NCBI GenBank assembly: GCA_976226885.1
Contig: OZ320313.1
Coordinates: 64,914,001 to 64,978,000, forward strand
Source: Iphione sp. A-MEVVRFRX5
Taxonomy: Eukaryota
DNA length: 64,000 nt
Direction of reading: 5' to 3'
Under the pieces are notes generated by a model. The model saw only the letters and a list, made by a program, of their open reading frames with translations. It made no database searches and was not told where the DNA came from. Shown here piece by piece: positions 22,201 to 64,000 of the stretch (positions are counted from its first letter, which is position 1; each line of letters starts with the position of its first letter). A program made the translations under genes and the position numbers.

Positions 22201-22669
22201 CAGAGGAGTTTTTATAACTGAAAGCCAGAGAGAAAGGGAAACGTGTCAGTTTAGGGGACACGGCAACTGTCAGTGACTCAAGTAGCTCACCACGATTTTC
22301 ATTACCGTTAACCCTTGGGTAGTGGCCTGTTTAGCATTCGTAATAGTATCAGTCCACAGGTGTACACAAATGACATACAACAGGCCGGTGTGCGACTGCG
22401 GTGACCTGAATACAATATTATGCAGACATCCTTACCATTGTTTGCCTTTATGTAAATGTTATGGATACAGATAGATCACCATCACTCGGTTTTGAAATGC
22501 TGGCTGTACGGTCGAATGACTCATGCTTACAAATTAAGAAAACCACCGGACACCCCATATTTCATGCACCTGTGACAATATTATCTTAATATTTGGAGAA
22601 TTATTTTAAAGATAAAGTAATTTAGGGTATGCCTCGGATCATTATACCTAAAATGGCAGCATTTTTTCT

Positions 22670-24120
22670 CTACATTGAACATGACACAGCACATTGTTGA
22701 TACTATACGACACTACAATCATCAAAAACAGTTCACTATAGCACTATTCCTTGACATCTCCAAAGCTTTCGATACTGTCTCACACAAAATGTTAATAGAG
22801 AAACTGAAACAAATTGGCATCACAAACACAGCACTGAGCCTATTTAGAGACTACCTAACCAATAGACATCAATGCACAATAGTAAATGGAGTAAAATCAT
22901 CATACAGACTAATAAAAACCGGTGTACCACAAGGATCAGCACTCGGTCCAGTCCTCTTCACCTTATACATGAACAATATTCACAAAGAAATTCGCCCGAA
23001 TGAGTATGCCATGTATGCCGATGATACCATTATACTATGTACCAGCAAATCAATCACTGCTGCAATACAAACAGCACAACAGACACTTATAAGGACACAT
23101 CATTGGTTGTCTGCTCACAAACTAGCCCTGAACATCACCAAAACACAATACATGATCTTTGGCACAAATAGAAATATGAATGAAATCAGACAATCAGTCA
23201 CAATAAAATTACAAGACATTACGCTAACACAAGCCTCTTCCTATAGATATCTTGGTCTAATGCTAGACAACACTCTCACCATGAAAAATCATATAGCACA
23301 CATAACCAAGAAGTTAAACACTACTTTATGTGCCCTGAACCTAGTGAACAAATATGTGGATGACAACACCTCTCTGATGCTATACAAACTCTTAGCACTC
23401 CCTCATATTGATTATTTAGACATCATCTGGTCTTGCATACCAAACAAGTACATAACACAAATACAAAGATTACAGAACAGAGGCATCAAGAGAGCACTGC
23501 ACCTGGACAAGAGAACACCAACTATAGAAGCACACAGGAAAGCCAACCTAATGCTAGTATCCGAACGCATTAATTTTCATTTACTTCTACAAGGGTATAA
23601 AGCATTTCTCCAAATACATCCTCACTATACACAGAAACATTTCCAACTACAAGATAGAACATATGACCTAAGGAACAATTACTCGGACAAATTCAAGGCA
23701 AACCCTGACCAACACTCATCACACATAAGCAAAACAACACATAACAGAATCATCACACAATGGAACAAATCACATATACATGCAATACACTATGACACCA
23801 TGCACCCACTACAAAGCTTCAAAAATGACATAATCCAACAATGGAAGTAAAACCCTCAGTTACTATCATAAACCTGGATAAATCTCAGTTATCATAGTCT
23901 CTATTCATCTCGATGGGTAATAATAATCAATTATGGCCTGGTAAAATAGACACAGATATTGATATATACTAGATACATCATAGATTAGGTAATAGGATAA
24001 TACGTTAAGCTCTCACTGCTGCTATCAACCTCTAACAATGTACATCAACAGCACCGGCCGAATACCAGCCTTAATGGCTGAAGTCGGATTGCTGTTTATT
24101 AAAGAAATTTAAAAAAAAAA
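22670..24120 (+). mobile_element. 5'-truncated non-LTR retrotransposon (L2/CR1 group LINE)
   Basis: RT-encoding ORF followed by a 3' UTR with an extended hairpin (24047-24096, core CAGCC-TTAAT-GGCTG), ATTAAA at 24098 and an A10 tail at 24111-24120. Confidence 0.9.
22675..23850 (+). CDS. LINE ORF2 reverse transcriptase, C-terminal part (N-terminus lost by 5' truncation)
   Basis: 391 open codons with FLDISKAFDTVSH, GVPQGSALGPVLF, YADD, LALNITKTQYM, YRYLGLMLD and PHIDY motifs typical of CR1/L2 RT. Confidence 0.92.
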   Translation: MNMTQHIVDTIRHYNHQKQFTIALFLDISKAFDTVSHKMLIEKLKQIGITNTALSLFRDYLTNRHQCTIVNGVKSSYRLIKTGVPQGSALGPVLFTLYMNNIHKEIRPNEYAMYADDTIILCTSKSITAAIQTAQQTLIRTHHWLSAHKLALNITKTQYMIFGTNRNMNEIRQSVTIKLQDITLTQASSYRYLGLMLDNTLTMKNHIAHITKKLNTTLCALNLVNKYVDDNTSLMLYKLLALPHIDYLDIIWSCIPNKYITQIQRLQNRGIKRALHLDKRTPTIEAHRKANLMLVSERINFHLLLQGYKAFLQIHPHYTQKHFQLQDRTYDLRNNYSDKFKANPDQHSSHISKTTHNRIITQWNKSHIHAIHYDTMHPLQSFKNDIIQQWK

Positions 24121-32147: not shown

Positions 32148-35100
32148 TCATCGCACACACTAGATGAAAGAAAAGAGATGATAGATCAGTTCACACTAGA
32201 CAGAGCAAGAAAGAATTTTAATATTATTTCGAGTTAAACTTACAAAATACCATTTGTTGAAGCAGCTTTGTAAATCATCTGTATTGAGTTACTGGTTCAC
32301 CAAGTTCTGTAACGTTCCCAAGAAAACACTGTGCAGACTTGTAAGTTTCTTTTCTTTATTTGAGCTGAACTCCTTTCCAGCTCGACAGTTTACGGTCTGT
32401 TCTTTTAGATGTTTAATGTTATATCTAATTTCTTTACAGCCATCGACTCCAGGTCCAACTAGACGACAACAACACAACTCGTCGGAACAAATCCCGCCAG
32501 TACAAGACGCATGTGATCACGTGAGTAGCGCGAGACTTGATTTCATTTCGGTTGTATGGCTAGACGGAATCACGCAATAGGGAATGAGAAATATTTTACA
32601 CGAAACATTAAATGCCATTTACTTCACAGTTTATTAATTAAAAGAATCATTTTTACAAAAGCATCAATGAAAAGGGCGCCACCTGATTTAATAACATTTT
32701 AATCCGCTCTTTCCATGGACGTTAACAGACTAATGGATAGTTACTTGCTAAGTCTCAGACTACTGCATCGTTATTTAAACTCGCCATGTCTGCTTTGTTG
32801 AGCTGATGTCAAAAATTTGTAACCGAAGTACATTTACATGTATTGGGTAAATTGTTATAGCCACAGGGAGGGGGTTCACCAACTGTAAAAAAGTAAATCA
32901 ATCCATTTCCTTCATTAGGTTTAAGCCTTTTTTGCAGTTCCCTTTCGGAATGTTATTCAAACGTTATCGCAGTCTGAAAGATCCATCTAGGGAAGGATCT
33001 TCAATTAGAGTCTCAGAGAGGGTTTCATCAGGGCAGTGCATACTGCAGAGTGATGGATTGGGTGTTTGGCTGGCCCTGACCAGCGACAGGCTTTGTGTCA
33101 TGTCCCACTGGTCCCAGACATCGGGCAGAGTAGTAAATGGTGTTGGCCATCCATTGCTAGCCTATCCCGTCTGTCGCATACCTGCATTAAGAGGTGGTAC
33201 TTGTCTGAACTTCTTTCCACTGAATTGAACAGTGTGCATATTTATTTATGCACGTCCTGATTCGAGAGTGTACATTTAGCTGCTTATCTCATTTCGCGGA
33301 GCCTTATTTCTCTTTTGGTGGTGAAGAATCCTGTCACTTTGAATTCTCTTGGACCGAATTCAGGAATACACTCACCGAACACACTGAAGAAATTTTAATT
33401 TAACAACACTGGTTCACATAGATATTTCAAATTTTAAATGCTGTGGCAAACTGATTAACCTAATGCCTTCCCCCCCAAAGGATTGCATCACTTTTGATTG
33501 AGTAGGAATGCAGGGGAAAACTGCATTACTGTGGAAGAATATTCACTGCTCATCCTTTGGATATAACAACCGTAGTTTTCTTAGGTATAAAGATGTTTAC
33601 AAGCTATATTATTATGTCATCGTTTTAGACATTAAAGACGTTACATTTTTTGTAGAGGTGCATTCATAAAATATTTTAAGATATTAATGTTAAAGATATC
33701 AATGTGACAAAATATTTCTAGCTTTCTTATAAAGTTGGCACCAAGCTTGATTGTATTATAGTTGTGTACTTGACGGATCGTCATGTTGAGTATACACGTA
33801 TCCGCATCAAAGGTCCAGAGGCACCTTCCTGGAAAGGTTAATTCATCAAATGATTTTAGGAAGTAGTATTATAACACTAGTGTAGTTTGTCTGACCTTTT
33901 TTTTAAAATGTACCTGCCTTTGAAAAAAAACTGCCACTTACAAGCTGGGGTGATCGATCTCACAGTGGTTCTTTGTACCCAGTACCTTTCATCCATGTCA
34001 GTGACTTTCTGTCTACCCACATATAACGACCGCCTAGCACACGCATACACGAAGGACATGGCATCTATGACTTCGGAATACCCAGCTGTCCAGTTATGAG
34101 CACACTCCCACGCTTTCTGCTCATCATACACACCACTTCCATTGTTAGATCACCCGATGCTACCGAGGGTCCAATGTGTCGTTTATGTGGGTGACCATGG
34201 GTTCTGACTCCGAGGGCCAGTATTCATGCTCGTCTGAGCTTGGCCAGGCTTGTTTGTCGCTGACCCTTTGCTTGCCAAGCAGCGGGCCCTTCCTGGGTTA
34301 TTTTCCGGCTGGACACTGGTGAATGGTGGCGCCCGGTGATGGATGGGGCCCACCTGTTGATGAAGCGGCTGTCTCTGAGGTCAGCCAGCCTGCCGTCCGT
34401 TCGTCCCTGCTTTGCCTACCCTTCCTACTCTACCGACCGACCCACCAACTGCCGACCTAGACCAGACGCAGGAGGTATTGACCACTTAGCCACATCTGAA
34501 AGCTGCCTTTCCCCTGTAGATGTATATGTATAAAAGGGAATTTATACGTTTCTGAGATGTTTTTTTTAAAAAAAGGTTTAAGCGTTTAAAAGTATTAATA
34601 ATTACACGGCGAGATGGCTGAGACCGGAGTGAGAATGTATATTAGATAAAAAAAGTCCATGTAGCTGTGCTAAGCAGCCTTGCTCAGCTGTGAAGCTGCA
34701 CCTATACTTTTTCAATATTGGAAAGCGTTACGTTCATTCTATCAGATAGCAGCCTACCCCTCAAGTAATTTCGCAGGAGGAATGGTTTGATTACACTTAC
34801 GATGCTTATTCATGCTTACTCAAGATGCGAAGCCGTTCAAACAACACCTATCTAAAGGCCTTGCCATTAGAATATGTCCTTAATACCTGCAGGCAGTCAG
34901 CATTGTACAGGTGCTGTCTTCAGGAAGTGCGCCGCAGAAAAAGTGGGAGGGGTAATTTTAAAAAGGAGTTGTGTTTTATCATTCAAAGAGGATTATGTGT
35001 ACCTAGTTTTGCCTGCTTCACTTGTTTGATTATTGATGAGCACAGTTGTTCTTTTGGCTGAGTTGTGCTTTTTCCCTTCGGAATAAGCTCAGCGTGCCCT

Positions 35101-36344
35101 GACTTTATCCAAAATTGTCAATTTTCCATTGCATTTGAACATGGCTAAAACATGCTGATCAGCCATGGGTTAAATCCACGGAAAATATAACTTGACGTGG
35201 AGCACGTATGGGCAGCGATCTGGATATAAGTGTTTTGGTAGCAAATTAAAGGTGACCTGATGCAATTACTACAGTCGGCAGCCGGCGTGTCGGAGTCAGC
35301 ACCACTTGTGTGCGGACGCCATAAAGAAGCGCAACGGTCGTTCAAAGGGGGGCTATTAACGATCTAAGAGGCAATCGACCGAACCCAGAGAAACCCTTGC
35401 AACCTCAGACTTGGGTAGGCTCTGTTTCCAAGGGACCAGTTTGTAGGCATTGAGCTATGGAAATTGCTGCTTCAAAACAACGATTACCGAGTAGTATTTG
35501 CCTGACTGACATTAATGGTAGGAGCTCGTGAGAATTTCGGTCGAATAGTATTTGCGGGAAGTCTGCATTTCAGGCTCATTTCCGGGCCCAACTCTGTTTT
35601 CGCCAAACAGAATTATTACTCCATAGCATACTTTAAAAATGACTTTCTCTATTTCGATTGACATTTTTCTCCGTTGAACTTCGTAAATCTTCAAAAGGCC
35701 AGAAAACCTTTGTACCATCATGTGAAGCATTGCGCTGTACTTGTTTGCCTGATGTTTGAAAGAAGAATTTATTAAATAGACCATGACTTCATCTCCATAG
35801 AATGTAGGAACGTATTGTGAGGTTCTCAGCGTTCTACTCGAAGACCATTAGGTTGTCTATTTAATAACGGGGATCAGATGTACATGTTCATGTTTATAAT
35901 TTTATCACAGTCAGAGTTACCTGTATACAGTAAATCATTTAGCAGTGTGTGTCATTGAATCATAAACATATCGTCATCAAGCATTACCTCCACACTGAAC
36001 TGAAGTCGAGAGTATTGAGGCAGCTGATGTTAATGCTGATATTAAAGTATACCGTGAATCATTTATAGACTCTTAGATGTTGCTTTCGATTCACTGGTAC
36101 CAACTCACAGGGAGACACTTAATGACTATATTGACGAAACACCTCAGCATTATTGAGTACTTGCTACTAAGCATGGTATATAACTATGGACTAGACCTTA
36201 TTGCCGGCGTCACCTCCAGGTGGTATCGAGCGTCTACCTTCGTTGTTAGGGTAACCGTAATCGTCCCATGCCGTTTGTCAGTCTGTAATGTGTGTCATGC
36301 CATGCTAATACGTAATGGACCTCACGGCTGAACTCCAGAGGCGG

Positions 36345-36422
36345 CTCCTCCTCCTCCTCCTCCTCCTCCTCCTCCTCCTCCTCCTCCTCCTCCTCCTCCT
36401 CCTCCTCCTCCTCCTCCTCCTC
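36345..36422. repeat. (CTC)26 trinucleotide microsatellite
   Basis: 78 bp of perfect CTC repeat. Confidence 0.97.
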
Positions 36423-37283
36423 CCCCTCCCGCCCTCCTCCGCGCAAGTGCAAGATCTTCAAATACATGTACATGTACTTTTCTCTAACGAAGTAGTGTAT
36501 GAAAAGGCAATATATCTGCAGGCGACAATTTACTCAATTCCCTTATGGTCGCACGACACTAACATATGCCTCATTCTATGTCGGTGGGAACGTAGTGTCC
36601 AGGGTATTTCATTTTGACGGAGTTTGCAGCTTGCTTAGGGAACAGTTCCCACAGCCTGATGATGCAGTTCTGAAAACCTGGGATATATTTGCCCCGTAAA
36701 ATCGCACTGTGAGGCATTGGACTGCCTCTCAAGAAATAAAGCGGTTAAAGATCGCCATGTCGTTCAAATCCAGACAGCATATACACCAATCATAAATACC
36801 TTTTGCCATAAAGGAAACGGGGCAAATTTGTTCTGTAGACTCCCGTTGGCTGCCAGGTCTGCTTTTAGTGCCTGGTTGAGTCGTTAGAGATGTGATTAGC
36901 CACGCTGCCACGTGAATTTGGCTGTTTTATCAGATGGCCTTAATTATGATAGATGGGGACCCTCACCTAGGTTCATTGGGTGAGATTTTCAACGAAAAAA
37001 GATATCCCGATAGAGGAATTCTTTCTCATGGAAGATGGATGGAGTGCCTCTTGGAGTTATTTTTCAAGTCCATGTACAAGCCTTCGCTATTTCCCTAGGA
37101 AAGCAATGCTGTCTTATTATTTTGGTGATTCACTTAAGCAAATCGTACGCGATTTAGAAATGTGAGCGGTGGTGCTTTTTAGAATGTAGTCGGTTCGTCA
37201 ACAGCTTGGGAGGTATTTTCCATGACAGAATGCATTAAGGCCTGTCTACCTTGAATTATTTGAATGACTTCGGGGGAGAAGAG

Positions 37284-37370
37284 TGACGTCATTCTTAGAC
37301 AGCACCATACTGACGTCACCGGTACCTGGCCAGACAGCCTCCCTCTCTCGAGTGTGTTTGCTAGCTGAGG
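37284..37370 (+). promoter_or_regulatory. Candidate promoter with two perfect CRE sites and a short non-coding first exon
   Basis: TGACGTCA at 37284-37291 and 37311-37318. Strong donor GAGG|GTGAGG at 37371 gives a 96-nt intron to the 37467 acceptor. Confidence 0.4.
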
Positions 37371-37488
37371 GTGAGGTCTGTTAAAGAAGCTATCCCTCAC
37401 TCTGGCCCACTGCCCGCCGTCCTCATCTTTCCCTCATCGGTCTCCTTGGTTACACATCTGTTACAGGGGATACATATTAAGGGCGGTG

Positions 37489-37531
37489 ATGGAGAATGAA
37501 GAGGGCGGCTTCCAGCGGAAGGGATGGCACT
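37489..37531 (+). CDS. Candidate first coding exon of the IQ-SCHIP1 gene (MENEEGGFQRKGWH, phase-1 end)
   Basis: Pyrimidine-rich acceptor ...catctgttacAG|G (exon from 37467), ATG in good Kozak context (gtgATGg), donor CACT|GTATGC at 37532. Its phase matches the next candidate exon. Predicted by eye only. Confidence 0.4.
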
Positions 37532-38071
37532 GTATGCCAGCCAAGCAGATACTCATTTCAGTTGTGGCCCCAGCCGGCCAGCATTTAGAAGGGAGTGAAT
37601 TATAACATTGGCCAGCCTAGTTGGCCTGAGGTAGATTGAATAAGTCAGGGGTCGAACACCGTCCTGAATGCAGTGGTCTGTTGACGGTAGTATCCATCTG
37701 ATTTTGATCCGGAAGGTTCTCTTGACACTACTTTCAGAACTGCTCAACCGTATCATGTGATATTTACTGATGAACTTGGCTACAGGAAAGCGACAGTCTG
37801 TCATGTTTACACCAGGGATCACTCTTTTTAAAGATTCACTTCTGGTCCTCCTTGCCTAACGCATTTTATACAACCATAATGCAATTTAGTATTTATAAAA
37901 AAAATTGTATCCGTCGCTATTTCATTTCTGCCAAAAGGTACAAGTCACCACCCACAAAAGATGTCGCCCTAGTGACCTTGGCCCGTCCGCTATGACCTTC
38001 ACCGCCCCGACTCTGCAGGGAGCGCTCTTTTAAAGATTCATGGCGGCGCTTTAATGTCACACTATGCACAG

Positions 38072-38213
38072 ATCAGGCTGGCTGCCGGCCCAGGAAGGCA
38101 GCGGAGAGGCCGGCCAGTCCCGCTAAGACCCGCCGGCTGAACCGGTCTGACCTCGGTCATCACCCAGGCGGGCCCGCCAAAGAGATCCAGAAAGGAAAAA
38201 AAAACCAAGCTAG
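38072..38213 (+). CDS. Candidate internal exon of the IQ-SCHIP1 gene (YQAGCRPRKAAERPASPAKTRRLNRSDLGHHPGGPAKEIQKGKKNQAR)
   Basis: GC-rich island with acceptor atgcacAG|AT and donor CTAG|GTTTAG. The one frame of the three that stays open starts in phase 1 and ends in phase 2, joining 37531 to 39028 in frame. The donor is only moderate. Confidence 0.4.
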
Positions 38214-39027
38214 GTTTAGTGTATGAAATATAATGCTGTTGCGGGAAGACATGCAGTTTGATGTGAAACACTATTCTGTGTCACACGTGTCTGACATGTA
38301 TAACTTGTCTGTGTTTTAGGGTTGAAACGTGCATTTCCTGGTGCATTGTCCTCATGCAATACACTACTCTCTAAGGACCTTGATGGCTCCAGCCATGCTA
38401 TTGAGGGTGTATGCTCATTTGTTGTCAGGGTAATAAATGATCCTAGCCCATTGCTAATCGTTGTCTGCCATAAACATTTCATGGGCCTAAGGATTTTGTT
38501 TGTAGTGGTGCGTTTTAAAGAAAGTAATCATTCATTCTTTTGTGCGCCTTTCTGATATGGGGATGTCGTGAACAGGTGTGATTCAGGAAAGACTGTGACC
38601 TCCCGAGGTCAAGAACAATTAGGCAAATGGGAGGAACTAGGCCTTCAAGTGTCTAGTTTTATATCAAAAACCCGTGAAAGAAATGTATAAGCACGTCTCA
38701 TTTCCATCTCATTCAAACAGTCGTTCTCAGATTGATGACCGAAAACCTTGTGTTTTACCACGCGTGATGTAGCTATGGCGTGCACAAACTGGTTTTTAAG
38801 AAGAAAGGAAACGTACACCTTCCTGGAGTTGTCATGGGAAAACGTGGTTTTCCCACCGGTCGAAAAGTATGAGGCGATTTACCAACCATAGAGACTGCTG
38901 TTATAGCTTGATCAGAAACACTCATATATATGCAGGTTGACATGTATATATCGGTTGCTGAAATACAGGAAGAACAGTTCATTAGATGTTCATTAAGATA
39001 AGTTTCTGTTGCTCTGTTGTGATATAG

Positions 39028-40432
39028 GATCCAGCGAGCATGGCGGCAATATAAGCGTCATAAGGACGGCGCCGGAAATAGGACGGGTTCCGGGTCAGCA
39101 TCGGCGGCGTCAGCGGACGATTACAACGACGACGAGGACGACGACGACGATGAGGAAGACTACGAGGAAGACGACCTTATTGCCCCACAGCGGCGGCGCG
39201 GCCGACGGCGACTGCGGTCGGCGGGAGGGCGGCGCGTTCCGGGGACGCCCAACAACAATATGTCCCCACAGCTGTCGGAGCCTGAGGAGTTGAGTGACAC
39301 GGAGAGTGCGCCCTACGATGGCCAACAGGCTATGTCGGTGTCCACTCCTGAGGACAGCGAGAAGAATCTGAACGACGAGGACGAAGACGAAGAGGACGAC
39401 GAGGAGGTGGACGATATACACAGTGATTCAGAGCACGACAAAGCGGGAGCCGGCCGACAGCAGCAACAGCAACAGCAGCAAGAGGACGACCACCGCCATT
39501 ACGACCATGCCCCCGCGCGCGCCGCCAGCCGCGGCGGAACTGCTCGCGCCGATGAGGCGGAGCCCTGCGGGGTACGCAGTGCCGAGCAGGCGGCCAGCGC
39601 AGAGGCAGGCGGGGCAGGCGGCCGCTGGATCGAGCCGGAGCCAGACTCGGTGGTGTCGGACTACTCGGAAATGGCCGACCCGCTCAAGGAGCACCTGGCC
39701 AACGTGCAGATCATCCAGAAGGAGGACCTCGATGTCGGGAACACCATGTTCCCTAACCAGTTTAGTGTGGGTCAGAAGATAATGCGCAGCCCGGACGAGA
39801 CGGAGGAGGAGTTTACCCGCCGCCTGAGGAAGATCAACTATCTCAGCCTGGCGCAGGAGTTCGCCGCGCTGAAGAAGATCGACGCCGACGCGCTGCCTTT
39901 CGACCTCCACAAGGGCGGAGTGCAGGATCTGCGTCCTATGCAGGGTGACTACAGCCCCATGAGTGATTCCAGCTCGGAGGAGGCGGAGGGTACCGATCAC
40001 TCGGCCGCCACTACCCCAATGGACGCGGTGGCCGGGCCCATGGCGGCCGTAGGGGTGAGGCCGGCCTCGGGCGCCGCGCTGGCCCTGACTAAACTTACCG
40101 AGCGCTTTGAACGCGCCATCAACCCCAAAGACGCCTGGTCGGCCGACGTGCCGACAAAAGCTGCTTCGAAAGCAGCCACCACCGCAAAGCCTGGTGATGG
40201 TAACACTAAGGCCACTGACATAAGCCAGACTTGGGCCGAGGACCAGCCTGACTCTGAGAGCCAAGAGGTAGTACCAGCCGCTCAGCGGCAGGTGCCGTCA
40301 GCCAGCCCCGGCAGCGAGAAGCTTGGCGACTTCGACGTGTACAACATAGAGAGCACCTTGCCACAGCTCGATTGGTCCATGCTGGAAGAGCAGCTCCACC
40401 GTGCCGCTGAAGAGGAGCGACAGAAACAAAGG
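39028..40432 (+). CDS. SCHIP1: Large internal coding exon of a schwannomin-interacting protein 1 homologue carrying an IQ motif (IQCJ-SCHIP1-like); gene is partial
   Basis: The ORF-track frame starting at 39260 stays open upstream to an acceptor (ctgttgtgatatAG|G, AG at 39026-39027) and ends at a donor (CAAAGG|GTGAGT, GT at 40433). Translation begins IQRAWRQYKRHK (39029-39064), resembling the IQ motif of vertebrate IQCJ (IQRAWREY as recalled). It contains two acidic tracts and ends FDVYNIESTLPQLDWSMLEEQLHRAAEEERQKQR, resembling SCHIP1 PPMDWEALEKHL. The exon is GC-rich with GC3 bias against an AT-rich background. Confidence 0.8.
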
Positions 40433-40483
40433 GTGAGTAGTAGTTCATTTTGTATACAAACATCACAAAGCGTCTGTCTCCTT

Positions 40484-40484
<1 letters not shown>

Positions 40485-40516
<32 letters not shown>

Positions 40517-40532
40517 GTCTTTCTCTTCTGTC
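40485..40532. repeat. (CTGT)n microsatellite abutting the assembly gap
   Basis: Directly visible. Confidence 0.9.
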
Positions 40533-40704
40533 NNNNNNNNNNNNNNNNNNNNNNNNNNNNNNNNNNNNNNNNNNNNNNNNNNNNNNNNNNNNNNNNNNNN
40601 NNNNNNNNNNNNNNNNNNNNNNNNNNNNNNNNNNNNNNNNNNNNNNNNNNNNNNNNNNNNNNNNNNNNNNNNNNNNNNNNNNNNNNNNNNNNNNNNNNNN
40701 NNNN
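40533..40704. other. Assembly gap (172 N)
   Basis: Run of N inside the intron following the 40432 donor. Confidence 0.99.
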
Positions 40705-63236: not shown

Positions 63237-64000
63237 CAGATGTGTCGCCGTTCTAGCTTAAGTAGAGGCGATGCCTGCTTGAGCTACTCCATGCATTACG
63301 GGGTTTGTTCATCATTGTCGGTGTTCACACCTAAGAAGATACAGTTAAACCTCATTTTAGGGTCTTGTTTCATAACTGCTTGTCCGAAAAGTAAAGGCAG
63401 AGGAAATGGTCAACGCAGCAGTTCTGCAGGAATATAAATTAGACAAGATAGCTGGATTGTGAGGGAAGATGGATGAGGGTATGCTTTCTTAACCAGTACT
63501 AATTTAAAGAACTGATCGAGGAACATATCCACATAGGGGTTTATACATAGCAAGAAAGCAAAAGATATCTACTATTAGAGGAGACCAGAGCAGATTAGAA
63601 ATATTTTTTAATAGCGAATTTTATTTACGTTGATAAGCGTCGAGATAATCTAACCAGACTGTCAGCCAGACAAACAGACCTTTCCGATTAAAAGAATGAC
63701 TCGGTTTTATTTTGGGTTGTCAGCAGAGGAACGATAGGTAATAACTATTGATAGGTAATAACTGTTGACGGTTGTGTTCTAGTAGTACACTAGCATAGAA
63801 AACGTCTCGGGCAATCAATAGGCACAGATTTGCTGAAGTTTACCGATGACTGGATCCGAAATAGCCTCTGACGGAAATCCCAATATACCGATTACACTTT
63901 TAAGCTCTGAGAAAATAGTTCCTGGATTCTTACAGTCTCATCATGGCACAGGATCACTGAGTTACAGTGTTATCCTCCCGTATACATACTTTATCTAGTG

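What the first reader, a model, noticed from the sequence alone, without database searches (positions are those of the whole stretch)
39028..40432. IQCJ-type IQ motif and SCHIP1 core encoded in one exon: the vertebrate IQCJ-SCHIP1 'read-through fusion' may be the ancestral single gene
Seen: the ORF track starts this frame at 39260, but it is open back to a splice acceptor at 39027. The hidden N-terminal part begins IQRAWRQYKRHK, and the same uninterrupted exon ends in LPQLDWSMLEEQL. Established: in mammals IQCJ (IQ motif recalled as IIQRAWREYLQRQ) and SCHIP1 (PPMDWEALEKHL) are annotated as adjacent genes joined by a read-through transcript, IQCJ-SCHIP1, which binds calmodulin and localises to axon initial segments and nodes of Ranvier. 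Inference: in this invertebrate the IQ motif and SCHIP1 N-terminal region cannot be separated by splicing. The IQ-bearing SCHIP1 would then predate vertebrates, and vertebrate 'IQCJ' would be a subdivided 5' part of SCHIP1 rather than a separate gene that fused.
Basis: partly seen in the sequence, partly recalled or inferred. Interest (0 to 1): 0.72.

Follow-up and report, generated by a model that had tools for sequence, protein, structure and literature searches.

The report
Annelid IQCJ-SCHIP1 gene, IQ exon
This is a real, conserved coding exon of an invertebrate (probably annelid) copy of the nerve-scaffold gene IQCJ-SCHIP1; it does show the calmodulin-type IQ part and the SCHIP1 part belong to one old gene, but public annotations of many other animals already show this.

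Summary
Observation confirmed. The frame is open from 39023. A good acceptor lies at 39027/39028 and a donor at 40432/40433. The exon starts IQRAWRQYKRHK and ends ...LPQLDWSMLEEQLHRAAEEERQKQR.

I found the upstream partner exon at 32440-32520. It joins through a phase-2 intron to give ...RRNKSRQYKTHVITIQRAWRQYKRHK. That junction peptide scores above Pfam's cut-off for PF15157 (IQCJ-SCHIP1 N-terminal family), so the IQ segment is homologous to IQCJ and not convergent.

Two related annelid contigs carry the same acceptor and the same in-frame IQ. Their substitutions fall mostly on third codon positions, so the part upstream of the 39260 ATG is coding.

The evolutionary inference holds. Proteins with PF15157 plus SCHIP-1_C in one gene are annotated in molluscs, a brachiopod, a nemertean, echinoderms, hemichordates and amphioxus. 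In most vertebrates they are listed simply as SCHIP1 isoforms.

It is not new. RefSeq names say so, and Abascal et al. [quoted passage not shown]

Caveats:
- The SCHIP-1_C core domain is not in this exon or this window.
- No RNA runs were listed.
- Some mollusc models start at internal Met residues and lack the IQ, so IQ-less products are not excluded.

Interest is low.

The parts
32440..32520 (+). Upstream coding exon A. It encodes (x)HRLQVQLDDNNTTRRNKSRQYKTHVI plus the first two bases (AC) of a split Thr codon. This is the middle of the IQCJ-SCHIP1 N-terminal domain.
   Evidence: tblastn of mollusc, brachiopod and Owenia proteins. My N-terminal HMM gives E = 8e-11. Acceptor ctttacag|C and donor CAC|gtgagt.
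32521..39027 (+). Phase-2 intron of about 6.5 kb, lying directly before the Ile of the IQ-like motif.
   Evidence: GT at 32521 and AG at 39026-39027. Joining AC + G(39028) gives Thr and the conserved ...HVITIQRAW.... In 13 genomic ORF calls and two contigs read directly (L001, L007), 15 cases in all, the residue before IQRAW is R or S. That is an AGN codon, meaning the ORF reads through an AG acceptor.
39028..40432 (+). Large coding exon B (468 codons), running from the IQ-like motif to the LP.LDW..LE motif that immediately precedes the SCHIP-1_C domain.
   Evidence: Open frame. 62 homologues at E <= 1e-3, the best at 9e-107. Donor AGG|gtgagt.
39029..39064 (+). IQ-like motif IQRAWRQYKRHK.
   Evidence: Part of the PF15157 match of the junction peptide. 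Pfam IQ (PF00612) scores only 13.8 bits, below its 20.3 cut-off. Against two related annelid contigs, 5-6 of 8 nucleotide differences fall at third codon positions and are mostly synonymous.
39059..39241 (+). Lineage-specific, in-frame, charged low-complexity linker of 61 aa: a D/E run followed by an R-rich stretch.
   Evidence: The same interval is 6 aa in L001 and 10 aa in L007.
39260..39262 (+). Internal ATG (NNNMSPQLSE) where the ORF lister starts. The Met is conserved in annelids. It could be an alternative start, but it is not the exon start.
39326..39361 (+). Conserved block QAMSVSTPEDSE. Gastropod models without an IQ start at the equivalent Met.
39632..39730 (+). Conserved block EPEPDSVVSDYSEMADPLKEHLANVQIIQKEDL.
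   Evidence: Nearly invariant columns S/D/SE in alignment A1. Coordinates.
39797..39916 (+). Conserved block ETEEEFTRRLRKINYLSLAQEFAALKKIDADALPFDLHKG.
   Evidence: Invariant columns N, L, AQEFA, LK, A, P, L in alignment A1. Coordinates.
40325..40432 (+). Conserved block GDFDVYNIESTLPQLDWSMLEEQLHRAAEEERQKQR, homologous to vertebrate PPMDWEALEKHL.
   Evidence: amphioxus E = 1.5e-7. My C-terminal HMM matches positions 1-26 at E = 2.8e-6.

Best explanation
Window positions 32440-40432 (+) hold two consecutive coding exons of the orthologue of IQCJ-SCHIP1/SCHIP1 in a lophotrochozoan genome, probably an annelid.

Exon A and the start of exon B together encode the C-terminal half of the IQCJ-SCHIP1 N-terminal domain, ending in the IQ-like motif IQRAWRQYKRHK. 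The rest of exon B encodes the acidic, Ser-rich middle region of SCHIP1 with its conserved blocks, up to the LP.LDW..LE motif. The coiled-coil SCHIP-1_C domain is encoded by further exons more than 23 kb downstream, outside the window.

By analogy with the mammalian protein, the product would be a scaffold. Its IQ-like helix would bind calmodulin. Its acidic CK2-type region and C-terminal coiled coil would mediate self-association and binding to ankyrin, spectrin and FERM-protein partners. This functional part is inferred and was not tested.

The one-gene arrangement of IQ module plus SCHIP1 is the ancestral bilaterian state. The separate 'IQCJ' gene record in vertebrates is a product of annotation and of alternative 3' ends.
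For: Shown here:
- Open 468-codon frame with canonical splice sites.
- Exon A found by tblastn and HMM.
- The spliced junction peptide scores 29.2 bits on PF15157, above the cut-off of 28, E = 1.1e-6.
- Exon B has 62 homologues, including proteins named IQCJ-SCHIP1 that carry PF00612, PF15157 and PF10148.
- The profile search and the amphioxus search show the same architecture in molluscs, Lingula, Tubulanus, echinoderms, hemichordates, Branchiostoma and vertebrates.
- Two related annelid genomic contigs have the same acceptor and an in-frame IQRAWR.Y.R. Differences are mostly synonymous, with 5-6 of 8 at third positions in the IQ block and 13-16 of 15-17 in the next conserved block.
- L004 is a 2976-nt contig with an intronless 690-aa ORF holding IQRAW, the middle region and SCHIP-1_C. 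It is therefore transcript-like evidence from a relative.
- Short Logan contigs (1.8-3.9 kb) encode complete proteins with all three domains. The 549-aa ones match the length and domain set of the Magallana gigas protein.

From the literature: Abascal et al. [quoted passage not shown]
Against: - No RNA or DNA sequencing run of this genome was listed, so the junctions 32520/39028 and 40432/40433 and the transcription start are not confirmed by reads.
- The SCHIP-1_C exons and the N-terminal exons (the first, canonical IQ) were not found anywhere in the 64-kb window. The link from this exon to a SCHIP-1_C domain therefore rests on orthologues.
- The canonical Pfam IQ model is below threshold on this motif.
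- Pairwise BLAST to vertebrate IQCJ modules is weak, E = 7e-4 to 0.03 in a 10-sequence database. Homology to vertebrates rests on the Pfam profile and on amphioxus as an intermediate.
- The arthropod homologues listed show no IQ module.
Confidence: 0.9

Rival explanations
1. The gene's main or only product here starts at the internal ATG at 39260, from a promoter in the intron or exon. Positions 39028-39259 would then be 5' UTR or intron, so this species makes an IQ-less SCHIP1.
For: The Met in NNNMSPQLSE is conserved in annelids and Liolophura. Some mollusc models start at internal Met residues of the homologous region and lack the IQ. No reads are available to exclude this.
Against: The IQ block upstream of the ATG stays in frame in three genomes and evolves mostly by synonymous change. 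An AG acceptor with a pyrimidine tract sits at the same codon position in 15 of 15 cases, 13 genomic ORF calls plus L001 and L007. The transcript-like contig L004 contains the IQ joined to an upstream exon. As an additional isoform this remains possible. As the only product it is unlikely.
Confidence: 0.07
2. The IQ motif is a convergent calmodulin-binding motif unrelated to vertebrate IQCJ. The resemblance is limited to IQRAW.
For: Pairwise BLAST to mammalian IQCJ-SCHIP1 is weak (E = 0.025 against Meriones). Pfam IQ is below threshold.
Against: The PF15157 match covers 52 residues (profile positions 24-76), not just the motif, and passes the gathering cut-off. The flanking NH.L.V...RRN..R module aligns from annelid through amphioxus (E = 2e-12) to vertebrate ENHQLAMD...KVKIIQRAW. 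The position relative to the DW motif and SCHIP-1_C is the same in all phyla.
Confidence: 0.01
3. [quoted passage not shown]
For: Human and mouse annotation, and papers that describe a fusion of two separate genes (PMC4373682; PMC6764479).
Against: The same domain order and the same junction sequences occur in Lophotrochozoa, Ambulacraria, Cephalochordata and Vertebrata. One ancestral gene is far more parsimonious. No stand-alone invertebrate IQCJ was seen apart from truncated models, for example Mytilus coruscus P0050. However, the length filter would have hidden short proteins.
Confidence: 0.02

Closest known systems
Vertebrate IQCJ-SCHIP1 (IQ-bearing isoform of schwannomin-interacting protein 1), e.g. 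Meriones P0148, Narcine P0177
   Same: Same order of elements: the NH.L module, then the IQ-like IQRAWR.Y motif, then an acidic Ser-rich region, then LP.(M/L)DW..LE..L, and then (in orthologues) SCHIP-1_C. The junction peptide passes the PF15157 cut-off.
   Different: The vertebrate sequences seen here start at MRLEELKRLQ and have no counterpart of the upstream canonical IQ that invertebrate proteins carry. Small indels just after ...LQRQ in lizard, bird and fish sequences may mark exon boundaries there, but no vertebrate genomic DNA was examined. In this genome the whole stretch from IQ to DW is one exon. This species also has a 61-aa charged insertion after the IQ. [quoted passage not shown]
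Lophotrochozoan 'IQCJ-SCHIP1 readthrough transcript protein-like' models (Haliotis P0040, Liolophura P0041, Lingula P0043, Owenia P0056, Capitella P0059, Paralvinella P0011)
   Same: Direct orthologues at 39-57% identity over exon B, with all conserved blocks shared. Genomic ORF calls from what look like annelids, bivalves and gastropods show the same exon start directly before IQRAW and the same single exon through to the DW motif.
   Different: Only two exons of the gene lie in this window. The linker after the IQ and a polyQ run are specific to this species.
[quoted passage not shown]
   Same: Described as the fly homologue of human SCHIP1 (PMC5882220).
   Different: No fly sequence was retrieved here. 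The arthropod homologues that were retrieved (chelicerates, a millipede) show SCHIP-1_C and the DW motif but no IQRAW module. Whether the annelid protein acts in Hippo signalling is unknown.

Membership tests
IQCJ-SCHIP1 N-terminal domain (Pfam PF15157) | Match to the family profile at or above Pfam's gathering score | tested here: met
   The spliced junction peptide (exon A plus the first 31 residues of exon B) scores 29.2 bits against a cut-off of 28, E = 1.1e-6, profile positions 24-76 of 99. Exon B alone gives no hit, because the domain is split by the intron.
IQCJ-SCHIP1 N-terminal domain (Pfam PF15157) | IQ-like motif IQRAWR.Y preceded by the NH.L...RRN module | tested here: met
   HRLQVQLDDNNTTRRNKSRQYKTHVITIQRAWRQYKRHK aligns with amphioxus, hemichordate, echinoderm, mollusc and vertebrate sequences.
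Canonical IQ calmodulin-binding motif (Pfam PF00612) | Score at or above 20.3 bits; consensus IQxxxRGxxxR | tested here: not met
   13.8 bits. The motif has IQxxxR, but Q replaces G and the second basic residue is shifted by one. It is 'IQ-like', as in the Pfam family title. The canonical IQ of invertebrate orthologues lies in upstream exons, which were not found in the window.
SCHIP1 (Pfam PF10148, SCHIP-1_C) | C-terminal coiled-coil domain encoded by the same gene | tested here: inconclusive
   tblastn, regular-expression and HMM searches of all six frames found no SCHIP-1_C exon in the window. In orthologues the domain begins right after the end of exon B (P0041 residues 487-724). The transcript-like contig L004 joins the two parts.
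SCHIP1 | Conserved LP.(M/L)DW..LE..L block immediately upstream of SCHIP-1_C | tested here: met
   STLPQLDWSMLEEQL compared with vertebrate PPMDWEALEKHL and amphioxus LPTLDWASLEAHL.
IQCJ-SCHIP1 as one transcription unit | One mRNA containing the IQ module and the SCHIP1 part | not testable with these tools
   No sequencing runs were listed for this genome. Indirect support comes from the single exon, the codon-position pattern and transcript-like contigs of relatives.
IQCJ-SCHIP1 function | Calmodulin binding; ankyrin/spectrin binding | not testable with these tools
   Needs a pull-down or similar experiment.

The most novel reading that the evidence does not exclude
Three features would be ancestral to Bilateria: the single exon from IQ to DW, the phase-2 intron directly before the IQ isoleucine, and internal-Met starts for IQ-less products near the conserved AMS.STPE block. 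One SCHIP1 gene would then have produced both calmodulin-motif-bearing and IQ-less scaffolds since before the origin of nodes of Ranvier. Vertebrates would only have added introns and an alternative 3' end, which annotators later named IQCJ. If so, the three human gene records (IQCJ, SCHIP1, IQCJ-SCHIP1) should be merged.
Probability: 0.4. Interest if true: 0.3.

Novelty: new member of a known kind. Interest (0 to 1): 0.2.

Why it matters
This is a clean comparative data point for a gene-annotation question: are human IQCJ, SCHIP1 and IQCJ-SCHIP1 one gene or two? It also bears on the age of the IQ-bearing SCHIP1 scaffold, which in mammals sits at axon initial segments and nodes of Ranvier. The answer is one ancient gene, present in animals that have no nodes of Ranvier.

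That answer can already be read from RefSeq and Pfam annotations of molluscs, amphioxus, echinoderms and most vertebrates, and it was hinted at in print (PMC6101605). The finding therefore corrects a habit of naming and does not reveal new biology.

The modest new elements are:
- the conserved lophotrochozoan exon layout;
- the phase-2 intron just before the IQ;
- the observation that invertebrate proteins carry an extra canonical IQ that the mammalian sequences seen here lack.

Tried and rejected
- Pfam scan and PDB sequence search on exon B alone: nothing. This is explained by the intron splitting PF15157, and by SCHIP-1_C lying downstream.
- Search for the remaining exons in the window, by tblastn with 10 orthologues, motif regular expressions and two home-made HMMs over all six frames: only exon A was found. 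A weak MRVCFLN match at 63473 was judged to be chance.
- Earlier scan notes: nothing relevant.
- Exon structure in deuterostome outgroups: the look-up of encoding contigs returns only about 10 kb around the first coding piece. The amphioxus locus L006 ended before the IQ exon. It did show an exon end at ...LLVE|N, matching the start of exon A. Lingula and Liolophura proteins were not on record. Comparing amphioxus isoforms revealed no boundary.
- Primary papers (Martin 2008, Martin 2017) are not held. The mammalian exon structure and calmodulin binding therefore rest on my own knowledge and on reference titles.
- Cluster look-up to name the closest relatives returned no names. 'Annelid' rests on the Paralvinella, Capitella and Owenia hits.
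- The large representative-protein search and structure prediction were not run, because the family assignment was already settled.

Full report
**1. The observation**

The mechanical ORF list starts this frame at the ATG at 39260. Translating 39029-40432 gives 468 sense codons, beginning IQRAWRQYKRHK and ending STLPQLDWSMLEEQLHRAAEEERQKQR. The nearest upstream in-frame stop is TGA at 39020-39022.

The sequence ...ttgctctgttgtgatatag|G places a good acceptor at 39027/39028. CAAAGG|gtgagt places a phase-0 donor at 40432/40433. The exon is 63% G+C against 43% in its flanks.

**2. The partner exon**

tblastn with mollusc, brachiopod and Owenia proteins finds one further exon, and an HMM of their N-terminal regions agrees (E = 8e-11). 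It lies at 32440-32520, bounded by ctttacag|C and CAC|gtgagt.

Its last two bases (AC) plus G at 39028 make a Thr codon. The spliced product reads HRLQVQLDDNNTTRRNKSRQYKTHVITIQRAWRQYKRHK.... This matches:
- Capitella: RRLQVQFDDDHTTRRNKSRLYATHVVTIQRAWREF
- Liolophura: NHQLEVEFDDNQTTRRNKKRHYLSNVITLQRAWRAY
- amphioxus: NHHLSVQYEDNASIRKNRSRFYKWRIITIQRAWRAY
- more distantly, vertebrates: ENHQLAMDVENNIEKY...ESKVKIIQRAWREYLQRQ

**3. Is the IQ of the IQCJ type?**

Exon B alone has no Pfam hit. The 58-residue peptide spanning the splice junction scores 29.2 bits on PF15157 ('Fusion protein IQCJ-SCHIP1 with IQ-like motif'). The gathering score is 28, E = 1.1e-6, and the match covers profile positions 24-76 of 99.

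The generic IQ model PF00612 reaches only 13.8 bits against a cut-off of 20.3. The motif is therefore 'IQ-like' and not canonical, as in the family's own title. The convergent-motif rival is rejected.

**4. Is the part upstream of the 39260 ATG coding?**

No RNA or DNA run of this genome was listed, so I used comparison with relatives instead. Two related genomic contigs have an AG acceptor with a pyrimidine tract at the same codon position and an in-frame IQ:
- L001 (Logan): IQRAWRAYKRQQDHDPGTPNNNMSPQLSE
- L007 (ENA, a 334-kb contig): IQRAWRSYNRRQRGTGSDQPGTPNNNMSPQLSE

In the ten IQ codons, 5-6 of 8 nucleotide differences per pair are at third positions, and 4-5 codons differ only synonymously. 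In the next conserved block, 13-16 of 15-17 differences are at third positions. This is the signature of a translated sequence.

Thirteen ORF-style gene calls on other genomic contigs begin a few junk residues before IQRAW. Together with L001 and L007, that makes 15 cases. In all of them the residue before I is R or S, that is AGN, an ORF reading through an AG acceptor. Judging by their sequences, the contigs come from annelids, bivalves and gastropods. In at least eight of them the same ORF runs on to the DW motif.

A phase-2 intron directly before the IQ, followed by one large exon from IQ to DW, is therefore a shared lophotrochozoan layout.

L004 is a 2976-nt JGI contig with an intronless 690-aa ORF. 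It contains VISIQRAWRSY, the middle region and a full SCHIP-1_C domain. In this window the corresponding exons are more than 23 kb apart, so L004 behaves as a spliced transcript from a relative.

**5. What the exon does not contain**

In orthologues, Pfam SCHIP-1_C (PF10148) begins immediately after the point where exon B ends (P0041 residues 487-724). No SCHIP-1_C exon was found in the window, and neither was the N-terminal exon carrying the canonical IQ (AA.CIQR..RG.L.RK.Y, above the PF00612 threshold in P0041, P0043 and P0056). I searched with tblastn, regular expressions and HMMs.

The title's 'SCHIP1 core' is therefore inaccurate. The exon holds the IQ-like motif plus the SCHIP1 middle region. 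That region contains these conserved blocks:
- QAMSVSTPEDSE
- DSVVSDYSEMADPLK
- RKINYLSLAQEFAALKKIDADALPFDLHKG
- GDFDVYNIESTLPQLDW

This species also has a 61-aa charged insertion after the IQ, where the relatives have 6 and 10 residues.

**6. The evolutionary inference**

The first homology search returned proteins named 'IQCJ-SCHIP1 readthrough transcript protein-like' from Haliotis, Gigantopelta and Mytilus. It also returned unnamed or otherwise-named models from Liolophura, Lingula and Potamilus. All carry PF00612, PF15157 and PF10148 in one polypeptide.

A profile search and a search with the amphioxus protein extend this architecture to more molluscs, the nemertean Tubulanus, echinoderms (Patiria, Strongylocentrotus, Acanthaster, Asterias, Amphiura, Diadema), the hemichordate Ptychodera and three Branchiostoma genomes. 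The Saccoglossus model has PF15157 and PF10148 without a PF00612 hit.

Short Logan contigs encode complete proteins with all three domains. The 549-aa ones match the Magallana gigas protein in length and domain set, and they look like assembled transcripts.

In most vertebrates the form bearing PF15157 is annotated simply as 'schwannomin-interacting protein 1 isoform X...'.

The arthropod homologues retrieved have SCHIP-1_C and the DW motif but no IQRAW module.

The combined gene is therefore at least as old as the common ancestor of deuterostomes and lophotrochozoans.

**7. A nuance on 'cannot be separated by splicing'**

Gastropod models P0077-P0079 start at MTLLTPEENQ. This is internal to the Biomphalaria model P0105 (...NSAMTLLTPEDNQ) and corresponds to QAMSVSTPEDSE in this exon. 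Scallop models P0069 and P0071 start at an internal Met of the region that the IQ-bearing Mizuhopecten model P0064 reads through.

IQ-less products from internal starts may therefore exist in lophotrochozoans too. Here the candidates would be the conserved Met at 39260 or the one at 39332-39334, inside the QAMSVSTPEDSE block. I cannot test this without reads.

**8. What is known**

The papers held describe IQCJ-SCHIP1 as a fusion transcript or gene bridging two genes (PMC4373682; PMC6764479; the title of Kwasnicka-Crawford 2006). They place it at axon initial segments and nodes, binding ankyrin-G in a CK2-dependent way (PMC9356056; PMC12190637).

Abascal et al. [quoted passage not shown]

I found no paper that discusses the invertebrate genes. 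The primary Martin 2008 and 2017 papers are not held. Calmodulin binding by the mammalian protein rests on my own knowledge and on the title cited.

**9. Verdict**

This is a real exon, correctly delimited and correctly interpreted. It is an ordinary orthologue of a known gene, and the evolutionary point is already visible in public annotation. The novelty class is a new member of a known kind, and interest is low (0.2).

Still open:
- read-level confirmation of the junctions;
- the location of the remaining exons;
- whether the large exon or the vertebrate-style split is ancestral. The amphioxus locus I could fetch ended before the IQ exon. It showed only that the exon boundary at ...LLVE|NH... 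matches the start of exon A.

Noticed in passing
window 22621-23847 (+): A 409-codon stop-free stretch with a reverse-transcriptase domain (PF00078, 109 bits). It lies in an AT-skewed, low-GC patch, upstream of exon A. This is a retroelement fragment.
   Followed up: partly
window 39059-39241 and 39458-39481: A species-specific, in-frame, charged insertion of 61 aa after the IQ motif (a D/E run, then RRRGRRRLR), where two relatives have 6 and 10 aa. There is also a Q8 run. I cannot tell whether the insertion is fully retained in the mRNA.
   Followed up: partly
window 40478-40704: A (CTGT)n microsatellite begins about 45 bases after the donor of exon B and runs into a 172-base stretch of N at 40533-40704. 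The gap was left untouched.
   Followed up: no
L006 11766-12410 (Branchiostoma lanceolatum): Five tandem copies, spaced about 105 bp apart, of the sequence encoding HFR(G/S)HLARKA(Y/F)I(N/S)LLWAQFDQ. This is the 3' half of the canonical-IQ exon of the amphioxus gene. They could be tandemly duplicated alternative exons or an intronic repeat.
   Followed up: no
P0117 (Huso huso) residues 38-76 and 133-173: The sturgeon protein carries two tandem copies of the NH.L...IIQRAWR module. Several fish proteins of about 720 aa may do the same.
   Followed up: no
P0040-P0043, P0056, P0083 versus P0148 and other mammals: Invertebrate proteins, amphioxus included, have an extra canonical IQ above the PF00612 threshold (AA.CIQR..RG.L.RK.Y) and a DRMDRNR block upstream of the IQCJ module. 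The mammalian, bird, lizard and ray sequences seen here start at MRLEELKRLQ, equivalent to invertebrate ...KMRLEKTMKQ, and so lack that part.
   Followed up: partly
P0077-P0079, P0105, P0069, P0071, P0064 (molluscs): Models without an IQ start at internal Met residues of the region homologous to exon B. In gastropods this is the Met of the conserved AM(S/T)..TPE block. From memory, this is close to where the vertebrate IQCJ-specific part joins the common SCHIP1 part. I did not test that here.
   Followed up: partly
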